This document shows, piece by piece, positions 23,113 to 29,240 of a stretch of 36,312 bases of DNA. A program made the position numbers and the translations under genes. Positions within the stretch are counted from its first letter, which is position 1. Every line of letters begins with the position of its first letter. A model generated the notes under the pieces. The model was not told the origin of the DNA and did not search any database. It saw nothing but the letters and a program-made list of their open reading frames with translations. Source of the stretch: Fonticula alba ATCC 38817 (taxonomy: Eukaryota > Protista > Nucleariida); assembly GCA_000388065.2 (NCBI GenBank), contig KB932201.1. The stretch is one strand, 5' to 3'.

Positions 23113-24366
23113 TTACAAGAGCTGGATCGGGTCCCGGTCGACCTGGCTCACCACAACCGACACCTGGTCGCTCTGGAGCTTCTCCTATTTTCGACCGAGC
23201 CGGTGGTACCCAGCAGTCGGGGAGACAGGTGTGTCAGTGGACGGGCCATTGTTATCGCAGGCGGTTTCAGAGCGGCAGGAGGAGGGGGAGGTGAGCAGAA
23301 GAAGGACGAGGGAGACAAATAGGGAGAGAGATAGAGAGAGAGACGCACCTTCAGCAGCGGCTGCATCACGTCGGTCAGATAGCCGCGCTCGGAGTTGGAG
23401 TGCTCACAGAGGAGGACACTGACACCGCGAGCCGCGGCGCTGAGGGCCTCATGGTGGCCCATCTCGCCGGTGAGCCAGCCGTCAACACCGGGGCCGGCCG
23501 CGGCCAGCACCGAAGCGCCAGAGCCGGCACAGATGGCCAGCTGGCTGACGGTCTGCTGGCCAGCCGCGACCGGGGTCGCCTGGTCCGGAAGGACACAACG
23601 CACTGTTGGCGGCACGAGGTCAGCAAATGGGGGGGGGGGGGGGGCACGCGGCTGGCAAGGGAAAGCAGGCTCGGGGGAAAAGCAGGGACAGGGGACTTAC
23701 GGTACTCCAGCTTCAGGCCCGCCTTCAGGGCGTCGGCGATGGAGGACAGGGCAACCGGCTCGGCGAAGGTGACAATGCGGCCCTCGCCGGCGTTCGGCTG
23801 GCCGGCCTCCAGGGCGGCGGCCGCCGCGGCACCGGTGAACTGGCTGATCGGGCGAACGGAGGTGGGCTGGCTCGAGGCGCGGCCGACGATGGAGGCCAGC
23901 CAGTCGTTGACTGGATGGGGAGGAAGAGTGGCCAAAGGGGCCAGATGGTCAGTGGGAGGCAAGGTGCACAGGTGCGATGGGATAGAGAGGGAGATCGACG
24001 CACTGCCACCCTCGCAGCTGTCCCACGCGGTGTGCGGGCAGTAGACGCTGATGCCGAGAGCCGCACAGGTCAGGGCGATGCGCTGGCGGTCATCCTGCGT
24101 GGTCAGCCGGCGAGTCTTGCCGAAGAGAGCCGGGTGGTAGGCGACGATGACGCTGGCCCCGAGGGCGGCGGCCTCGCGGACCACCGGCAGCGTCAGGTCA
24201 TTAGTCAGGAGGATGCACTCGTGGGTGGCGTTGGCGGAGACCGGGCGCGGGGGGAGGAAGTCCAAGGTCTCATGGGGGGCCTCGATGATGAGGCCGACAT
24301 TGTCCCAGGACCCGGCGAAGGCCAGCGGCGCGTGGCGCTCCAGAATGGAGACAACGCTGGGTGCGT

Positions 24367-24436
<70 letters not shown>

Positions 24437-24521
24437 AGCTGCGGCACAGGGGGATGGAAGAGAGAGGCTGGAGGCGCAAAGCGCACCGCTTAAGGAGGGA
24501 AGGCTTGGCAAGAGTAGACAT
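23113..24521 (-). CDS. NIF3: NIF3-like protein / GTP cyclohydrolase 1 type 2 homologue (exons 24521-24487, 24356-24004, 23910-23701, 23602-23349, 23184-23113; 307 aa)
   Basis: MSTLAKPSLLKR-VVSILERHAPLAFAGSWDNVGL, LLTNDLT, AYHP, CPHTAWD, INDWL, AICAGSG, TGEMGHHE, EHSNSERGYL and C-terminal SQVDRDPI match NIF3L1/Nif3. The four GT-AG introns preserve frame (924 nt total). Confidence 0.94.
24368..24435 (+). repeat. (GT)34 microsatellite in NIF3 intron 1 (AC on the sense strand)
   Basis: Read directly from the sequence. Confidence 0.93.
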
Positions 24522-25475
24522 GTTGGCGGCTCGAGAGGAGGTGGACAAAAGGGAGGCACAGAGGGAGGGGGCAGGGCGGACATGCACAGTTGCCTGGTCG
24601 CGGGGCTGGGGGGCGCCCCTTCGATCGGGCGGCCGCGCCTGACCGCGAGGGGCCAAACGTGATCTCCCCTGCGGCTGGCTCCGTCGGCACACACCGGCGG
24701 AGTCACTGAGTTGTCAACAGATTCGTGTGTGTGTGTGTGTGTGTGTGTGTGTTGTCTATTATCCAGCCTCGCCGCCAGGAGGAGGGGCGATTGCGAGCCT
24801 CGCGCCGTTGGACTAGCAACATCCAGAAAACGGCGGAATGCTGGCCGGCTCGTCTGCTGCGGCCGGGCGATCGCACCCCCGCTGCAGGCACCGCTGGCGA
24901 CATATTGGAACGCCCCCGCTCGAGAGACCGTCCCTGGCCCCCCCCCCCACCGTACCCCCCCCCCCCTCTCCTCACCGGCCACCAGGAAGACCGACGAGGG
25001 CTGGAATGTGCCAACTCCCTTCGGTTGGAGGGCGACCCTGGGCTGGCTTCCGGGGCAGTAGGGGGTGCGCCCCTGGGGGCCGGTGGTGCCGCGGCTCCGA
25101 TTTCGTGGCCCAGGCGCCGGCTGCCTGGGAGCCTCTTCCCCCAAGGGGAGCAGCAATTCGCTCCCAGCGAGGAAGCCCCTGGCAGCTGGGGCAGAGGGGT
25201 ATTCCACACGGGCCCTACCCCTCGCTGTGCCGCCCTCTCCCTCTTTGTCGCCCCTGCCGAGGGGGCTGCCCGCTTGAGCAAGCAGTCCCCAGTATGGGGC
25301 CCGCACGATCGCGTGTCCCGAGGAAGGCCAAAAGCACCCGGGGCAGCTCTACAGGCACCCCAGGCCTCGGGCACATTTTCTTCCTTCCCCTTCTCCCCCC
25401 CCCCCCCCCCTCCCTACCCCCTCCCTCCGCTGAGCGACTTCCCGCGCGGCGTATCTTGCCCCCTTCTCCGCACCC

Positions 25476-28024
25476 ATGTCCCTCGATACTAGCTGCCCCA
25501 CTATCCTGGAGGCATACCATGCCGTCCGCAAGGGCGAGCAGGACTGGTTCGTACTTTGCTGCCCCTTCCTCCTGCTGGCACTCATGGCCCGGTTCTGACA
25601 CACTTCCCTGCTCGGGTCCCTTTCGGCGCTTTCTGTGCCCCCCCCCCCCCCTCCACGGCCGGCCGCCATTGCCAGGCTCGTCCTCGGCTACCAGGGCCAG
25701 CGTAACAAGATCTCTGCCCTCGGCACTGGCCGTGGGATCGATGCCTTTGTTGAGCAGCTCGGGGCCGAAGTGCGTGCACATGAGCTTCCCGCCCTCCTCC
25801 TCTCCCCTTCCCCGCCCCCCCCCCCCCCCCCCCCTGATGATCCCCCTGTCTCACGCGCCCCCACGTCGACTTCGCATTTTCGGCAGCTCATCACTTTTGG
25901 CTATGTCACGGCCCCCTCCACCCCAGGGAAGTATGTCATGGTCGGCCGCATCAGCGAGGAGGCTCGCGGCCTCCAGAAGTCCAAGGCCCGCACCCATCGT
26001 CACACCCTGACCGACCTGATGCCCGTTCGTGTAGCCCCCGGCTTCTGCCTTTTTTTTTCCACCCCTCCTTTGGCGCTCGGCGCCCATGCTGGCACACGCA
26101 CATGCCCACATGCCCACATGCTAACCCGTGCAAATCCCGGTGCCCTGTAGTTCTTCCACGCGGAGATGGACATCGATGACCCGCTGACCGTGTCCAAGGA
26201 CTCACTTGATGAGGCGGTGGAGAACTCCACCAAGCCGGCCCCGGCGCAGGACCTGGACGAGGAGGTCCTCGGTGGTGGTGGTGGCGCTGCCACCGTGGCG
26301 GCCCCTGCCCCGGAGGACACCCCGGCGCCGGTGGCTGCCGCCGAGCCGGCCACCGAGAAGCCGGTCGTCGCCGATGCCGCGCCGGCTGCCACCAAGGAGC
26401 CGGAGCCGGAGCCGGAGCCGACTCCTGCCGCTGCGGTGGCCCCGGCCGTCGAGGAGCCCACCACCCCGGCCGGTGTCACCATTGAGATCTTCCAGCCGGT
26501 GGCCGATGCCGAGGACGATTCCGAGGAGGCCCGGCTGGCCGCTCGTGTGCTGGCCCGGAACCAGCGCCGCGCGCGTCTGGCCGAGACCACGGCCGCCCTC
26601 ATTGGCGATGAGCCGGTCGTGGAGGAGGACAAGCCGGCCGTGTCCATCGACGTGGAGCCGGAGGCCGAGAAGACCCCGGTGGCCGCCGCGTCGCCGGACC
26701 TCCAGCCCGAGGCTGCGTCTCCCGTGCAGCAGCAGGAGCCCGAGTCCGAGGCGTCGGCCGCCGCCTCGCCCGTTGCCCAGGAGGAGGCGGCGGCCGTTGC
26801 CGCCACCGATGCCGAGGAGGAGGCCGCTGTCGCCGAGCAGCCCGCCGCCTCGGCCTCTGCTGATACCTCGGCCGAGGAGGCTGACAGCCACCCCTCCAGC
26901 CCGGCCGATGCCAAGACCCTGATTTTCTCCGACCCGGAGCTTGGCGATGTGGAGCTGACGGAGGAGCAGCTGGCCGAACTGATGGACGACCTGGGCCTCT
27001 ACGAGCCGCCGTCCGTGACCAAGGCCCCCAAGATGAATCTCACCGCGGAGGAGGCCGCCATGATGCACGGTGTGCGCAATGCGTCGGTCGATCGTGCTGC
27101 TGCTGCTGCTGCTGCTACTGCCGGGTCGTCGGCCTCCGCCGGCAGCCCGAAGCTGGCCGAGGCCCAGGCGGCCGCCGATGAGGCCACCACGGCTGCGCGT
27201 GCTGAGATCGATCGCATTGTCACCCTGGTGGAGCAGGACTCGCCGGACATCCGCGATCTGAACATGAACCACGCCGAGTGCGTCCTGCTTGTTGCTTTGG
27301 CCCCGGCGCTCCTCGTGTAGCACCCACAATGGTGCTGTGCTCTTTACTGACTCCCTCCCCCCCCCCCCCTCTCTCCCTCTCTTTTTGTACAGGCACATTG
27401 ACCAGGCTGTCATGGACCGTCTGGGCGCCGCGCTGGCCACCAACACCCGCGTGAAGACCATTTCCCTGTGCAATGTCAACCTGCGCTGCTCCATGGTCAA
27501 GCCTCTGGCCGAGGGTCTGGCCCTGAACAAGCATGCCGAGGTTCTCAACTTGGAGACCAATGCCATCGGTCCTGAGGGGCTGGAGCACATCGCGGCCATG
27601 CTGGCCGTCAATGAGAGCCTCACCGAGCTGCGCCTGGTCAACCAGCGCATTCCGAGCTCTCAGCGGGCGGGTGCGTCTCTTCTTCCCCAGGTCGCCCCCA
27701 GGGGCGCGAAGGGTGGCCATCGGGGGGGGGGGGGGGGATGTTTCCTTCCTCTTTTCCTGCATTCTTTTGGGCCTCCCTTTCCTGACCGCTCTGTCTCCCT
27801 CTGCCTCTGTCCTCTCGTCGACGCATCTCTGCGCTGGCCGGCGCTTCTGCCCCGCAGAGCGCTCCATGATCAAGGCCCTGGAGAACAACAAGTTCATCCA
27901 GCGCCTGGGCATGAACTTCCGCGACAACAACGCCCGTCAGACCTCGGACAAGTATGTCTTCCGGAACAAGGACCTGGCTCGTCAGCGCCGTGTTGCCGCG
28001 GCCAAGGCCGCCGCCGGCAACTAG
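25476..28024 (+). CDS. Actin-binding fusion protein: N-terminal coactosin/drebrin-type ADF-H domain, acidic low-complexity linker, C-terminal tropomodulin-type LRR domain (exons 25476-25546, 25676-25769, 25887-26024, 26151-27277, 27393-27670, 27858-28024; 624 aa)
   Basis: ADF-H part: ILEAYHAVRKGEQDWLVLGY...FGYV...KYVMVGRISEEARGLQKSKARTHRHTLTDLMPFFHAEMDI, resembling coactosin. Tmod part: DIRDLNMNHAEHI, LATNTRVKTISL, LNLETNAIGPEG, NESLTELRLVNQR, ALENNKFIQRLG, RNKDLARQRRV, resembling the tropomodulin/leiomodin LRR and C-terminal helix. The exon sum of 1875 nt is divisible by 3. Confidence 0.88.
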
Positions 28025-29240
28025 TGCGCGCAGGTGTCCTGTCTCTTTGTCTCTCCTCCCGCCCACAAATACACCTTCCCTCCGTGGGGAACGACGCACA
28101 TATGACAGGGGGAGAGAAAGCGCGCGGCGGTGCACATTTCTCCGCTCTCCTCCGTGTGACAAAAATGCAGAATCGTCAACAATGCATGCCCCCCTCGAAA
28201 AGGGAGGATGATGGACAGAGAGAATGTGTGAAAGCCGGACGTGGCGGGGGGGAGAGGGGGGCCCGTGCGGTGGCCAAAAAATAGGACAACAGGAAGGGAG
28301 AGTGCCGGCTCAAAAATGGTGCCCCCGCCCGCGAAGGCAGGTGGATGGCTGTGTGGAGGGGGGGGGGAGGCGGCGCGGACACCGATGACAAGACACACAC
28401 AACCAACTGGCCACGGCGAAAGGCATGGCAGAACAGGGAAGAGGAGGGGGGGGGGCGCGGAGAGGCCGCCGCGGCAGGGGACAGTCTGAGAGGGGGAAGT
28501 GCACAAACAAATGACATCGGGGGGGGGGGCTAACTATGTGTGCGGCGCTGTCTATTTTGGTTGTGGGTATGATATGGCTGGCGCCGCCAGGAGGGAGGGC
28601 GGCCTCCGCAGAGGGCTTCCTCCGTCCTGGCGCGATGCTCTTCTTGATGGGTTCCTTCTTTTTCGTGAATACATGGGGTCCATGCACATACGCGTGAGCG
28701 CGGCCGCACAAATGGGGCGCACACGGAGAATTCCCCGCGCGCGGGTGCCCCTCCCGAAGGAGGGGCGCGCGCACGCGGGGGAGGAGGAGGGCCTGGCGTG
28801 GGAGGAAAGGCGGCGCGCGTGCGAGCTCCGAAGAGAGCCAACACACACACCGTCCTCCCGCCCGCCCGGGCGCCGCTCCTCAAGAGGCGGACGCATGGCA
28901 CCGATGAGACGGGCTAGAAGGGAGCAGGGGAGGAATGTAAGTAAGAGGAAGGGGGGGAAGAAGGGCGGGCGAAGAGCAAGGGGGGAGAGGGAGGGCGGTG
29001 GCTCAAACTGAAACAATCAGTGAGTAACCGTTTTGTTTCAACAGCTGGGCCTTATAACACAGGCACATTCAGGCAAGTCTGATGAAGACATCTTCTTGTC
29101 CAGTCGAACACACGCGCACACTCGAGGTAGCAAGGGAAAAGGGGGGAGGGGAGGCGAAGGGAGGGACAGAGAAAAAAAACATACATCTCGTCAGGTGCGG
29201 CGTAACGAGGACATCCGGAGTCGCCGTCATCCAGACCCCC

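What the first reader, a model, noticed from the sequence alone, without database searches (positions are those of the whole stretch)
25476..28024. Coactosin-type ADF-H domain fused to a tropomodulin LRR domain: candidate new actin pointed-end regulator outside animals
Seen: the spliced ORF starts with a coactosin/drebrin-like ADF-H domain and ends with a tropomodulin-like LRR cap and terminal helix. The end of the ADF-H domain and the start of the LRR lie in one uninterrupted 1127-nt exon (26151-27277), so the fusion does not depend on my splice choices. Established: tropomodulins cap actin pointed ends and are normally regarded as animal proteins; their LRR (ABS2) binds actin at the pointed end and drives nucleation in leiomodins; coactosin binds F-actin. 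I know of no described ADF-H plus Tmod architecture. Inference: the ADF-H domain could replace tropomyosin as the filament anchor, giving a tropomyosin-independent pointed-end capper or a leiomodin-like nucleator in an amoeboid opisthokont. That would bear on the origin of Tmod.
Basis: partly seen in the sequence, partly recalled or inferred. Interest (0 to 1): 0.85.

Follow-up and report, generated by a model that had tools for sequence, protein, structure and literature searches.

The report
ADF-H fused to tropomodulin-type LRR
The amoeba Fonticula alba expresses one gene that joins an actin-filament-binding ADF-H domain to the actin pointed-end-binding domain of animal tropomodulins and leiomodins, an undescribed combination showing this pointed-end module is older than animals.

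Summary
Window 25476-28024 (+) is Fonticula alba gene H696_00078. It has six exons and encodes 624 aa, and my model is identical to the deposited protein. Transcript contigs of 1.85-2.09 kb in four RNA runs cover all six exons with the five introns removed exactly as modelled, so it is one mRNA.

- **N-terminal domain:** residues 10-122 are an ADF-H domain (Pfam E 1.9e-7). It is closest to drebrin-like/Abp1, then coactosin.
- **C-terminal domain:** residues ~449-624 are a tropomodulin/leiomodin ABS2 domain. Sequence matches to solved structures give Lmod2 4e-21 and Tmod1 8e-18, against 1e-9 for the next LRR and 0.66 for CARMIL. The AlphaFold model has pLDDT 95-98, and its twelve best PDB matches are all Tmod/Lmod ABS2 (TM 0.93, rmsd 1.2 Å).
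- **Linker:** a 325-aa acidic, probably disordered stretch joins the two domains.
- **Second organism:** the same architecture is expressed as a poly(A) mRNA (P0028) in several metatranscriptomes.
- **Other lineages:** Tmod-type LRR proteins with different N-termini exist in chytrid fungi and an amoebozoan.

Function is untested. The canonical Tmod N-terminus, the capping loop and a WH2 domain are absent, so an ADF-H-anchored, Lmod-like pointed-end binder is an inference.

The parts
25410..25475 (+). 5' UTR; the transcript contigs start at 25410-25460, just after a C16 run at 25395-25410
25476..25546 (+). Exon 1 (start codon, residues 1-24 in part); the ADF-H domain begins at residue 10 (nt 25503)
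25676..25769 (+). Exon 2, ADF-H domain (residues 24-55)
25887..26024 (+). Exon 3, ADF-H domain (residues 56-101)
26151..27277 (+). Exon 4 (1127 nt, residues 102-476). One uninterrupted exon holding the end of the ADF-H domain, the whole linker and the start of the LRR domain
25503..26213 (+). ADF-H domain, residues 10-122 (spliced over exons 1-4). Drebrin-like/Abp1 then coactosin type
   Evidence: Pfam E 1.9e-7; PDB 1x67 at 3.5e-7 for the single sequence and 7e-10 for the profile
26214..27191 (+). Acidic Ala/Glu/Pro-rich linker, residues ~124-448 (net charge -49, low pLDDT). The sequence is not conserved in P0028, but the composition and an (EP)n stretch are
26955..27002 (+). Conserved short helix LTEEQLAELMDDLGL (residues 370-385), shared with P0028. 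It weakly resembles the animal Tmod motif 'DDQLAELAQELGIHG'
   Evidence: hhalign E 0.0038, probability 8.7%; helix, pLDDT ~85
27192..28021 (+). Tmod/Lmod-type ABS2 domain, residues ~449-624: N-terminal helix, five LRRs and a long C-terminal helix (spliced over exons 4-6)
27393..27670 (+). Exon 5 (LRR repeats 1-4, residues 477-570 in part)
27858..28024 (+). Exon 6 (LRR5, terminal helix, stop codon 28022-28024)
27926..28018 (+). C-terminal helix, residues 593-623, with the conserved basic end RNKDLARQRR. R611/R613/R614 align with Tmod1 R340/R342/R343
   Evidence: PMC4571291 for actin contacts reaching Arg-343
28025..28204 (+). 3' UTR as covered by the transcript contigs

Best explanation
Shown: H696_00078 is one expressed Fonticula alba gene. 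Its 624-aa product has three parts: an N-terminal ADF-H domain of the drebrin/Abp1/coactosin branch, a ~325-residue strongly acidic, probably disordered linker, and a C-terminal domain that is a bona fide tropomodulin/leiomodin ABS2 fold (five LRRs plus a basic terminal helix).

Inferred: the ADF-H domain docks on the side of an actin filament, as Abp1, drebrin and coactosin do without severing. It would thereby hold the ABS2 domain close to filaments. ABS2 would then insert its ascending loops and terminal helix into the groove between the first three subunits at the pointed end, as in Tmod and Lmod.

The protein has no ABS1, no TMBS1 and no Tmod-type capping loop before the LRR. The most likely activity is therefore a filament-anchored, Lmod-like 'leaky' pointed-end binder or stabiliser, not a tight tropomyosin-dependent cap. 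The ADF-H domain and linker would take the anchoring role that the tropomyosin-binding N-terminus has in animals.
For: - **Gene and mRNA:**
- **ADF-H domain:** Pfam 31.3 bits over the full model. Among solved structures only drebrin-like and coactosin ADF-H domains match (7e-10 and 3e-4). No cofilin, twinfilin or GMF matched at E<1.
- **ABS2 sequence:** phmmer to Lmod2, Tmod1, Lmod1 and TMD-1 gives 4e-21 to 2e-13, with a gap of 1e4-1e12 in E-value to the next LRR.
- **ABS2 profiles:** profiles built without the query score 156 bits (animal Tmods) and 145 bits (chytrids), against 119 and 92 bits for the nearest other LRR modules.
- **ABS2 fold:** the AF2 model has pLDDT 95-98. Its 12 best PDB matches are all Tmod/Lmod ABS2, with TM 0.89-0.93 and rmsd 1.2-1.9 Å. 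AFDB and ESM Atlas agree.
- **ABS2 alignment:** it is gap-free with animal Tmods through all five repeats. The conserved features are the ESN.I...G loop, NQ, E570, R596, the RN.D..R.RR helix end, and G539, which aligns with Tmod1 G268 / Lmod3 G326, the residue essential for both cap and nucleator function (PMC10665800).
- **Second organism:** the same architecture and the same linker helix occur in a 43% GC organism, expressed as a poly(A) mRNA in at least 6 samples. Selection has therefore kept the two domains together.
- **Role of ABS2:** PMC4571291 describes ABS2 alone as the pointed-end/nucleating element.
Against: - No biochemical or localisation data exist.
- Identity to animal Tmods in the ascending loops, which contact actin, is only ~32%.
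- The AU test does not reject a position of the ADF-H-LRR pair next to the large non-Tmod LRR clade (p 0.14). The Tmod-type grouping has 95/79 support only.
- Similar LRR-plus-helix modules occur in many uncharacterised protist proteins with no known link to actin.
- The Lys that corresponds to coactosin K75 is K70 in Fonticula but His in P0028 (the role of K75 is from memory).
- The ADF-H model was of low confidence.
Confidence: 0.45

Rival explanations
1. Lmod-like nucleator. ABS2 recruits two or three actin subunits and the ADF-H domain stabilises the nascent filament, so the protein seeds new filaments instead of regulating existing pointed ends.
For: - The best solved match is Lmod2, at 78.8 bits against 67.8 for Tmod1.
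- The Tmod capping loop and ABS1 are missing, as in Lmods.
- PMC4571291 shows that Lmod-type ABS2 alone can nucleate and that 11 loop substitutions turn Tmod ABS2 into a nucleator.
Against: - There is no WH2 domain and no polyproline stretch.
- ADF-H domains of the Abp1/coactosin branch are known as F-actin binders, not G-actin binders (established knowledge, from memory).
- The tree does not place the protein with Lmods. No vertebrate Lmod was in the tree, so this is not resolved.
Confidence: 0.17
2. Abp1-like adaptor. The ADF-H domain binds F-actin, and the LRR domain is a generic protein-protein interaction module that recruits a non-actin partner, taking the place of the SH3 domain of Abp1/drebrin-like proteins.
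For: - The ADF-H domain is closest to drebrin-like/Abp1, and like Abp1 the protein has a long acidic/proline-rich middle part.
- PF27087-like modules are widespread in proteins without a known actin role.
- The AU test leaves a basal position open.
- Chytrid homologues carry no recognisable actin-binding N-terminus.
Against: - The LRR is much closer to Tmod/Lmod than to any other solved or sampled LRR.
- Repeat number, loop lengths, the basic terminal helix and the critical Gly are all kept.
- Fusion to an actin-binding domain in two distant organisms argues for an actin-related role.
Confidence: 0.27
3. Artefact: a chimeric gene model or mis-assembly joins two neighbouring genes.
For: None found.
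Against: - One 1127-nt exon links both domains.
- Spliced transcript contigs at uniform depth (~60) span the whole CDS in four runs.
- An intron-less poly(A) mRNA with the same architecture exists in another organism.
Confidence: 0.01

Closest known systems
Tropomodulins (Tmod1-4; C. elegans TMD-1/UNC-94)
   Same: The C-terminal ABS2 domain has five LRRs plus a terminal helix, aligns without gaps, has the same fold (TM 0.93, rmsd 1.2 Å to 1io0), and keeps Gly (Tmod1 G268) and the basic helix end up to the residue equivalent to R343.
   Different: There is no PF03250 N-terminus (TMBS1, ABS1, TMBS2) and no conserved pre-LRR capping loop (Tmod1 164-186). An ADF-H domain and a 325-aa acidic linker stand in their place. 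Only a weak TMBS2-like helix is present.
Leiomodins (Lmod1-3)
   Same: Lmod2 is the best solved sequence match (3.9e-21). Like this protein, Lmods lack ABS1 function and the Tmod capping loop, and have an extra actin-binding element appended to ABS2 (PMC4571291).
   Different: The Lmod extra element is a C-terminal proline-rich region plus WH2, whereas here it is an N-terminal ADF-H domain. Lmods keep TMBS1, and none is detected here. Lmods are vertebrate muscle proteins.
Abp1 / drebrin-like protein (DBNL) and drebrin
   Same: The N-terminal ADF-H domain is of the same branch (1x67, 7e-10 with the profile), followed by a long acidic/proline-rich region.
   Different: The C-terminus is a Tmod-type LRR instead of an SH3 domain, and no SH3 is detected.
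Coactosin / COTL1
   Same: The ADF-H domain is related (E 3e-4 to 1e-3 with the profile). The Lys aligned with COTL1 K75 is present (K70).
   Different: Coactosin is a ~140-aa single-domain protein. The similarity is weaker than to drebrin-like.
Chytrid 'Tropomodulin/Leiomodin-1/RNI-like' hypothetical proteins (Chytriomyces, Physocladia, Entophlyctis, Zopfochytrium, Phlyctochytrium, Caulochytrium)
   Same: They have the same Tmod-type LRR domain at the C-terminus (89-115 bits to the query) and are non-animal opisthokonts.
   Different: Their N-termini are acidic or Ser-rich with their own conserved DGPPVPI..VR.TNP motif. They have no ADF-H domain and no PF03250.
CARMIL (LRRC16A)
   Same: It is an LRR-containing actin regulator.
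   Different: There is no meaningful similarity: phmmer E 0.66 and Foldseek 2e-4 with TM 0.39. There is no PH domain and no CPI motif.

Membership tests
Tropomodulin/leiomodin family | ABS2 domain: five-repeat LRR followed by a long C-terminal helix, same fold as 1io0/4pki/4rwt | tested here: met
   AF2 pLDDT is 95-98. The top 12 Foldseek PDB matches are all Tmod/Lmod ABS2, with TM 0.89-0.93 and rmsd 1.2-1.9 Å.
Tropomodulin/leiomodin family | The LRR sequence is closer to Tmod/Lmod than to other RNI-like LRRs | tested here: met
   PDB phmmer gives 4e-21 to 2e-13 against 1e-9 for the next LRR. Independent profiles score 156 and 145 bits against 119 and 92. The tree groups it at 95/79, but the AU test of the alternative gives p 0.14, so the alternative is not rejected.
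Tropomodulin/leiomodin family | Conserved Gly of LRR3 (Tmod1 G268 / Lmod3 G326) and a basic end of the terminal helix (Tmod1 R340-R343) | tested here: met
   G539 is invariant, and R611, R613 and R614 align with them (PMC10665800, PMC4571291).
Tropomodulin/leiomodin family | N-terminal Tropomodulin region (PF03250: TMBS1, ABS1, TMBS2) | tested here: not met
   There is no PF03250 hit at E<=1. Only a 19-residue resemblance to the TMBS2-region motif was found (hhalign E 0.0038, probability 8.7%).
Tropomodulin/leiomodin family | Pre-LRR loop that covers the second subunit's D-loop (Tmod1 164-186; Tmod-specific, absent in Lmod) | tested here: not met
   The region is an Ala-rich helix without similarity to the animal or chytrid pre-LRR motifs.
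Tropomodulin/leiomodin family | Lmod-specific C-terminal extension with WH2 | tested here: not met
   The protein ends 10 residues after the helix's basic motif, and there is no LKKV-type motif and no polyproline.
Tropomodulin/leiomodin family | Binds actin pointed ends (capping or nucleation) | not testable with these tools
   This needs biochemistry or complex modelling.
ADF-H domain superfamily | Full-length match to the Cofilin_ADF profile above the gathering score | tested here: met
   31.3 bits against 22.4, model positions 1-124 of 125. P0028 scores 35.3 bits.
Abp1/drebrin-like subfamily | ADF-H domain closest to the Abp1/drebrin branch | tested here: met
   1x67 (drebrin-like) scores 3.5e-7 and 7e-10. 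Coactosin scores 3e-4 at best, and cofilin, twinfilin and GMF are not found. This compares solved structures only.
Abp1/drebrin-like subfamily | C-terminal SH3 domain (Abp1/DBNL) | tested here: not met
   There is no SH3 hit. A Tmod-type LRR stands in its place.
CARMIL | PH domain plus a 16-repeat LRR plus a CPI motif | tested here: not met
   phmmer E 0.66, Foldseek TM 0.39, and no PH hit.

The most novel reading that the evidence does not exclude
The ABS2 pointed-end module is ancestral to opisthokonts, and possibly to Amorphea. It was combined independently with different filament anchors: a tropomyosin-binding N-terminus in animals, an unknown Ser-rich/DGPPVPI region in chytrids, and an ADF-H domain in the Fonticula lineage. 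On this reading H696_00078 is a working pointed-end cap or nucleator that needs no tropomyosin. That would make it the first non-animal pointed-end regulator of this family and a natural experiment on how Tmod function is assembled from modules.
Probability: 0.35. Interest if true: 0.8.

Novelty: new variant of a known kind. Interest (0 to 1): 0.62.

Why it matters
Apart from the Arp2/3 complex, tropomodulins and leiomodins are the classical proteins that act at the slow-growing (pointed) end of actin filaments. The reviews I could read treat leiomodin as lineage-specific (PMC11853071). A 2024 survey of actin-regulator evolution does not list tropomodulin at all (PMC12050087).

Three consequences would follow if the function holds:
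- A transcribed non-animal gene keeps the ABS2 domain almost unchanged in shape but replaces the tropomyosin-binding half by an ADF-H domain. Together with a separate chytrid branch, this moves the origin of the module to before animals.
- It offers a simple test of whether ABS2 is by itself a pointed-end binder that only needs some filament anchor.
- It gives cell biologists working on amoeboid holomycotans a candidate regulator of filament length and turnover.

Tried and rejected
1. **Word-indexed homologue searches.** Searches with exon 4, the C-terminal region and the ADF-H region returned essentially only the protein itself. The exhaustive representative search was needed.
2. **Metagenome scan.** A scan for more loci with the architecture found 600 pattern matches, none confirmed.
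3. **ADF-H model.** The AF2 model from a 3-sequence alignment was poor (pLDDT 54.8). Its fold search gave only noise, so it was discarded. ADF-H identity rests on sequence profiles.
4. **Exon-by-exon Pfam scan.** It found nothing but one weak LRR_6 hit, because the domains are split by introns.
5. **PF27087 as a diagnostic.** PF27087 (LRR_TMOD-LMOD) also hits DRC5, LRRC74B, NLRC3-like and PPP1R37-like proteins. Membership was tested by other means.
6. **AU test.** Forcing the protein next to the non-Tmod LRR clade was not rejected (p 0.14), so tree evidence alone is moderate.
7. **Actin-contact residues.** The 11 Tmod-to-Lmod loop residues and the interface table could not be obtained (no supplements held). 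A cap-versus-nucleator residue comparison was therefore not possible.
8. **Literature.** No paper combines tropomodulin with Fonticula or chytrids, names H696_00078, or combines Fonticula with ADF-H terms. Several key subscription papers were not held.
9. **WH2 or polyproline motifs.** None found.
Full report
**What is there**

The window is from Fonticula alba (65% GC). At 25476-28024 on the + strand I rebuilt a six-exon gene. Its exons are 25476-25546, 25676-25769, 25887-26024, 26151-27277, 27393-27670 and 27858-28024. All five introns have GT(G/T)CGT donors and AG acceptors, and the CDS is 1875 nt. The 624-aa product is letter for letter the deposited protein H696_00078, named 'hypothetical protein' by NCBI and 'ADF-H domain-containing protein' by UniRef.

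**Is it one transcript?**

Four public RNA runs (two samples, one study, 2012) each contain one assembled contig of 1850-2094 nt. These contigs lie on 25410..28204 and skip exactly the five modelled introns, at a uniform word depth of about 60. Four joints are listed as GT..AG. The fifth (27277|27393) is visible in the table of contig pieces for all four runs. Exon 4 by itself carries the end of the first domain, the linker and the start of the second domain. A two-gene or chimeric-model explanation is excluded.

**N-terminal domain**

Pfam Cofilin_ADF matches residues 10-122 over the whole model, at E 1.9e-7 and 31.3 bits against a cut-off of 22.4.

Among solved structures, the single sequence finds the ADF-H domain of human drebrin-like protein (1x67, 3.5e-7), then coactosin-like proteins at 0.03-0.17. 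A profile of the Fonticula and P0028 domains improves these to 7e-10 for drebrin-like and 3e-4 to 2e-3 for Entamoeba coactosin and the COTL1 entries. Cofilin, twinfilin and GMF were not found at E<1. The domain therefore belongs to the Abp1/drebrin/coactosin branch. From established knowledge (my memory), this branch binds filament sides and does not sever.

The AlphaFold model of this domain came from only three sequences and was poor (pLDDT 54.8). Its fold search returned only noise, and I do not use it.

**C-terminal domain**

- **Sequence.** phmmer of residues 350-624 against all PDB chains gives Lmod2 3.9e-21, Tmod1 8.5e-18, chicken Tmod 8.4e-18, Lmod1 ABS2 1.7e-17 and C. elegans TMD-1 2.4e-13. 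Each is a gap-free alignment of about 165 residues that runs to the end of the terminal helix. The next LRR proteins start at 1e-9 and cover only part of the domain. CARMIL scores 0.66.
- **Fold.** An AlphaFold model of residues 340-624, built on 48 aligned homologues, has pLDDT 95-98 from residue ~449 to the end. It shows an N-terminal helix, five beta-alpha repeats and a 31-residue C-terminal helix. Foldseek against the PDB returns twelve Tmod/Lmod ABS2 entries first (1io0, 4rwt, 4pki, 5wfn, 8f8t, 8iai, 4z8g, 4z79, 8iah, 4z94, 1pgv), at E 6e-14 to 8e-12. The isolated domains score TM 0.89-0.93 with rmsd 1.2-1.9 Å. DRC5 follows at 1e-6 and CARMIL at 2e-4.
- **Predicted-structure libraries.** AlphaFold DB clusters and the ESM Atlas likewise put leiomodins and tropomodulins first.

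**Relatives in sequence space**

The exhaustive search of 1.8 billion representatives lists many long multi-repeat LRR proteins by summed score. Ranked by best single domain, the order is as follows:

| Rank | Relatives | Best-domain score |
|---|---|---|
| 1 | P0028, a 560-aa environmental protein | 122 bits |
| 2 | Chytrid proteins: Physocladia, Chytriomyces, Entophlyctis, Zopfochytrium, Phlyctochytrium (auto-named 'Leiomodin-1'), Caulochytrium | 89-115 bits |
| 3 | Sponge, placozoan and hemichordate tropomodulins | 87-101 bits |
| 4 | Everything else | at most 71 bits |

P0028 is the only other protein of the set with an ADF-H domain: phmmer E 3e-17 to the Fonticula domain and Pfam 35.3 bits.

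In a maximum-likelihood tree of 55 domains, Fonticula and P0028 pair at 99/96. They sit in a 23-member set (95/79) with a chytrid clade (100/99), the animal Tmods (93/89), a Stenamoeba (Amoebozoa) sequence and two unknowns. A 28-member clade of other LRR modules is split off at 100/96.

An AU test does not reject moving the ADF-H pair next to that other clade (ΔlnL 3.9, p 0.14). The tree alone is therefore moderate evidence.

Profiles built without the query are clearer. Animal Tmods score 156 bits, chytrids 145 and both together 179, against 119 and 92 for the two non-Tmod groups.

The Pfam family PF27087 (LRR_TMOD-LMOD) is precomputed for the protein. It also hits DRC5, LRRC74B, NLRC3-like and PPP1R37-like proteins, so it is not diagnostic on its own.

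**Conserved features**

The alignment of Fonticula, P0028, four animal Tmods, five chytrid proteins and two others has no gap inside the five repeats or the terminal helix. The following are invariant or nearly so:
- the LRR asparagines;
- the E-(S/T)-N-x-I-x-x-x-G ascending loop of repeat 3;
- N560-Q561, E570 and R596;
- the helix end R-N-x-(D/E)-x-x-R-x-(R/K)-R.

G539 aligns with Tmod1 G268 / Lmod3 G326. Mutating that residue to Arg abolishes both capping by Tmod and elongation by Lmod (PMC10665800). R611, R613 and R614 align with Tmod1 R340, R342 and R343, and actin contacts of Tmod1 extend up to Arg-343 (PMC4571291). Identity of Fonticula to the animal sequences is 62% in the beta strands but only 32% in the ascending loops, which are the part that contacts actin. 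Retention of the actin interface is therefore plausible but not shown.

**What is missing**

- There is no hit to the Tropomodulin N-terminal family PF03250 (TMBS1, ABS1, TMBS2). Bona fide animal members in the same set score up to 2.5e-52.
- The region before the LRR, which in Tmod1 (164-186) covers the D-loop of the second subunit and is needed for capping but absent in Lmods (PMC4571291), is here an Ala-rich helix with no similarity.
- There is no WH2-like motif or polyproline.

In these respects the protein resembles the Lmod condition more than Tmod.

**The linker**

Residues ~124-448 are 26% Ala, 14% Glu and 11% Pro, with net charge -49 and low pLDDT. P0028 has a different linker of (R/K)REPEPEPEP repeats (net -28). 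Composition is conserved but sequence is not.

One exception is a short helix, LTEEQLAELMDDLGL (370-385, pLDDT ~85), which is conserved in P0028 as LTEAELAKLLEDVGV. It aligns with the animal motif 'DDQLAELAQELGIHG' / 'TEDELVELAAVLGLHS' upstream of the LRR (hhalign E 0.0038 for the single comparison, probability 8.7%). From my memory of the human Tmod1 sequence, this motif lies in the second tropomyosin-binding site. The match is weak and I treat it as a lead. If it is real, tropomyosin independence cannot be assumed.

**Second organism**

P0028 and its near-identical cluster members are encoded on full-length contigs of about 1.8 kb. Each has a single intron-less ORF, 43% GC, an AATAAA signal and a terminal A run. 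They come from at least six JGI samples of one series. A distant relative (34-43% identity) thus expresses the same fusion as one polyadenylated mRNA, which argues that the combination is functional and maintained. The organism is unknown. Among the representatives scoring above about 86 bits, only these two clusters show the architecture, so it appears rare.

**Mechanism**

*Shown:* the architecture, its expression, the fold and its conservation.

*Inferred:*
- The ADF-H domain binds the side of a filament.
- The long acidic linker acts as a flexible tether.
- ABS2 engages the groove between the first three subunits at the pointed end, as described for Tmod and Lmod (PMC4571291).

Because ABS1, TMBS1 and the capping loop are missing, I expect a filament-anchored, Lmod-like leaky cap or pointed-end stabiliser rather than a tight cap (confidence about 0.45). 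A variant of the same idea is that the two domains bind different filaments, tying a pointed end to the side of a neighbour.

Rivals are a true nucleator (0.17), an Abp1-like adaptor whose LRR binds something other than actin (0.27), and an artefact (0.01).

**Novelty**

Databases already annotate both domains automatically, and some chytrid homologues are auto-named Tropomodulin or Leiomodin-1. In the searchable literature I found no paper that links tropomodulin with Fonticula or chytrids, names the locus tag, or links Fonticula with ADF-H proteins. A recent review calls leiomodin lineage-specific, and a 2024 survey of actin-regulator evolution does not mention tropomodulin. Several subscription papers could not be read, so a prior mention cannot be fully excluded.

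I rate it a new variant of a known kind: a new domain architecture within the Tmod/Lmod ABS2 family. The side result is that the module predates animals.

Earlier notes of this scan show other unusual actin-regulator fusions in the same genome, such as a CARMIL-villin fusion. None concerns this gene.

Noticed in passing
window 25395-25410, 25638-25651, 25815-25834, 27357-27369, 27722-27737: Homopolymer C or G runs of 13-20 nt lie in four of the gene's five introns and directly at the transcript start. The 36-kb window holds 46 C/G runs of 10 nt or more. They also break short-read assemblies there.
   Followed up: partly
proteins P0037, P0039, P0055, P0057, P0059, P0084, P0108, P0119, P0125 (chytrid fungi): Chytrids carry a clade of Tmod-type LRR proteins without the PF03250 N-terminus. 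They share a conserved pre-LRR motif (…SYRP.SP…RRSS..P.AR…DGPPVPI.A.T..VR.TNP) and apparently have not been discussed in the literature.
   Followed up: partly
protein P0128 (Stenamoeba stenopodia, EukProt transcriptome): A 189-aa amoebozoan sequence groups with the Tmod-type LRR set. This hints that the module may predate opisthokonts, although the sequence may be a fragment.
   Followed up: no
proteins P0008, P0024, P0019, P0022, P0025, P0027, P0018 and others: Large uncharacterised eukaryotic proteins, mostly environmental, contain tandem copies of a Tmod-like 'five LRR plus helix' module spaced about 175-190 residues apart. One is from the green alga Cymbomonas. Only LRR Pfam hits were found.
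   Followed up: partly
L001-L006 (JGI samples 3300050363-3300050388): The P0028-type ADF-H-LRR mRNA comes from an unidentified 43% GC eukaryote and recurs in a whole series of samples. Its linker is a striking (R/K)REPEPEPEP repeat array.
   Followed up: partly
window 23375-25306 (-): The upstream neighbour on the opposite strand translates to NIF3-like sequence (…GSWDNVGLIIEAP…), flanked by (CA)n/(GT)n microsatellites near 24711-24760. It was seen only in the ORF list.
   Followed up: no
window 27724-27824 (intron 5), run X2: One RNA run has a contig covering part of intron 5 (depth 39). This could be unspliced pre-mRNA or DNA carry-over. The spliced form dominates.
   Followed up: no
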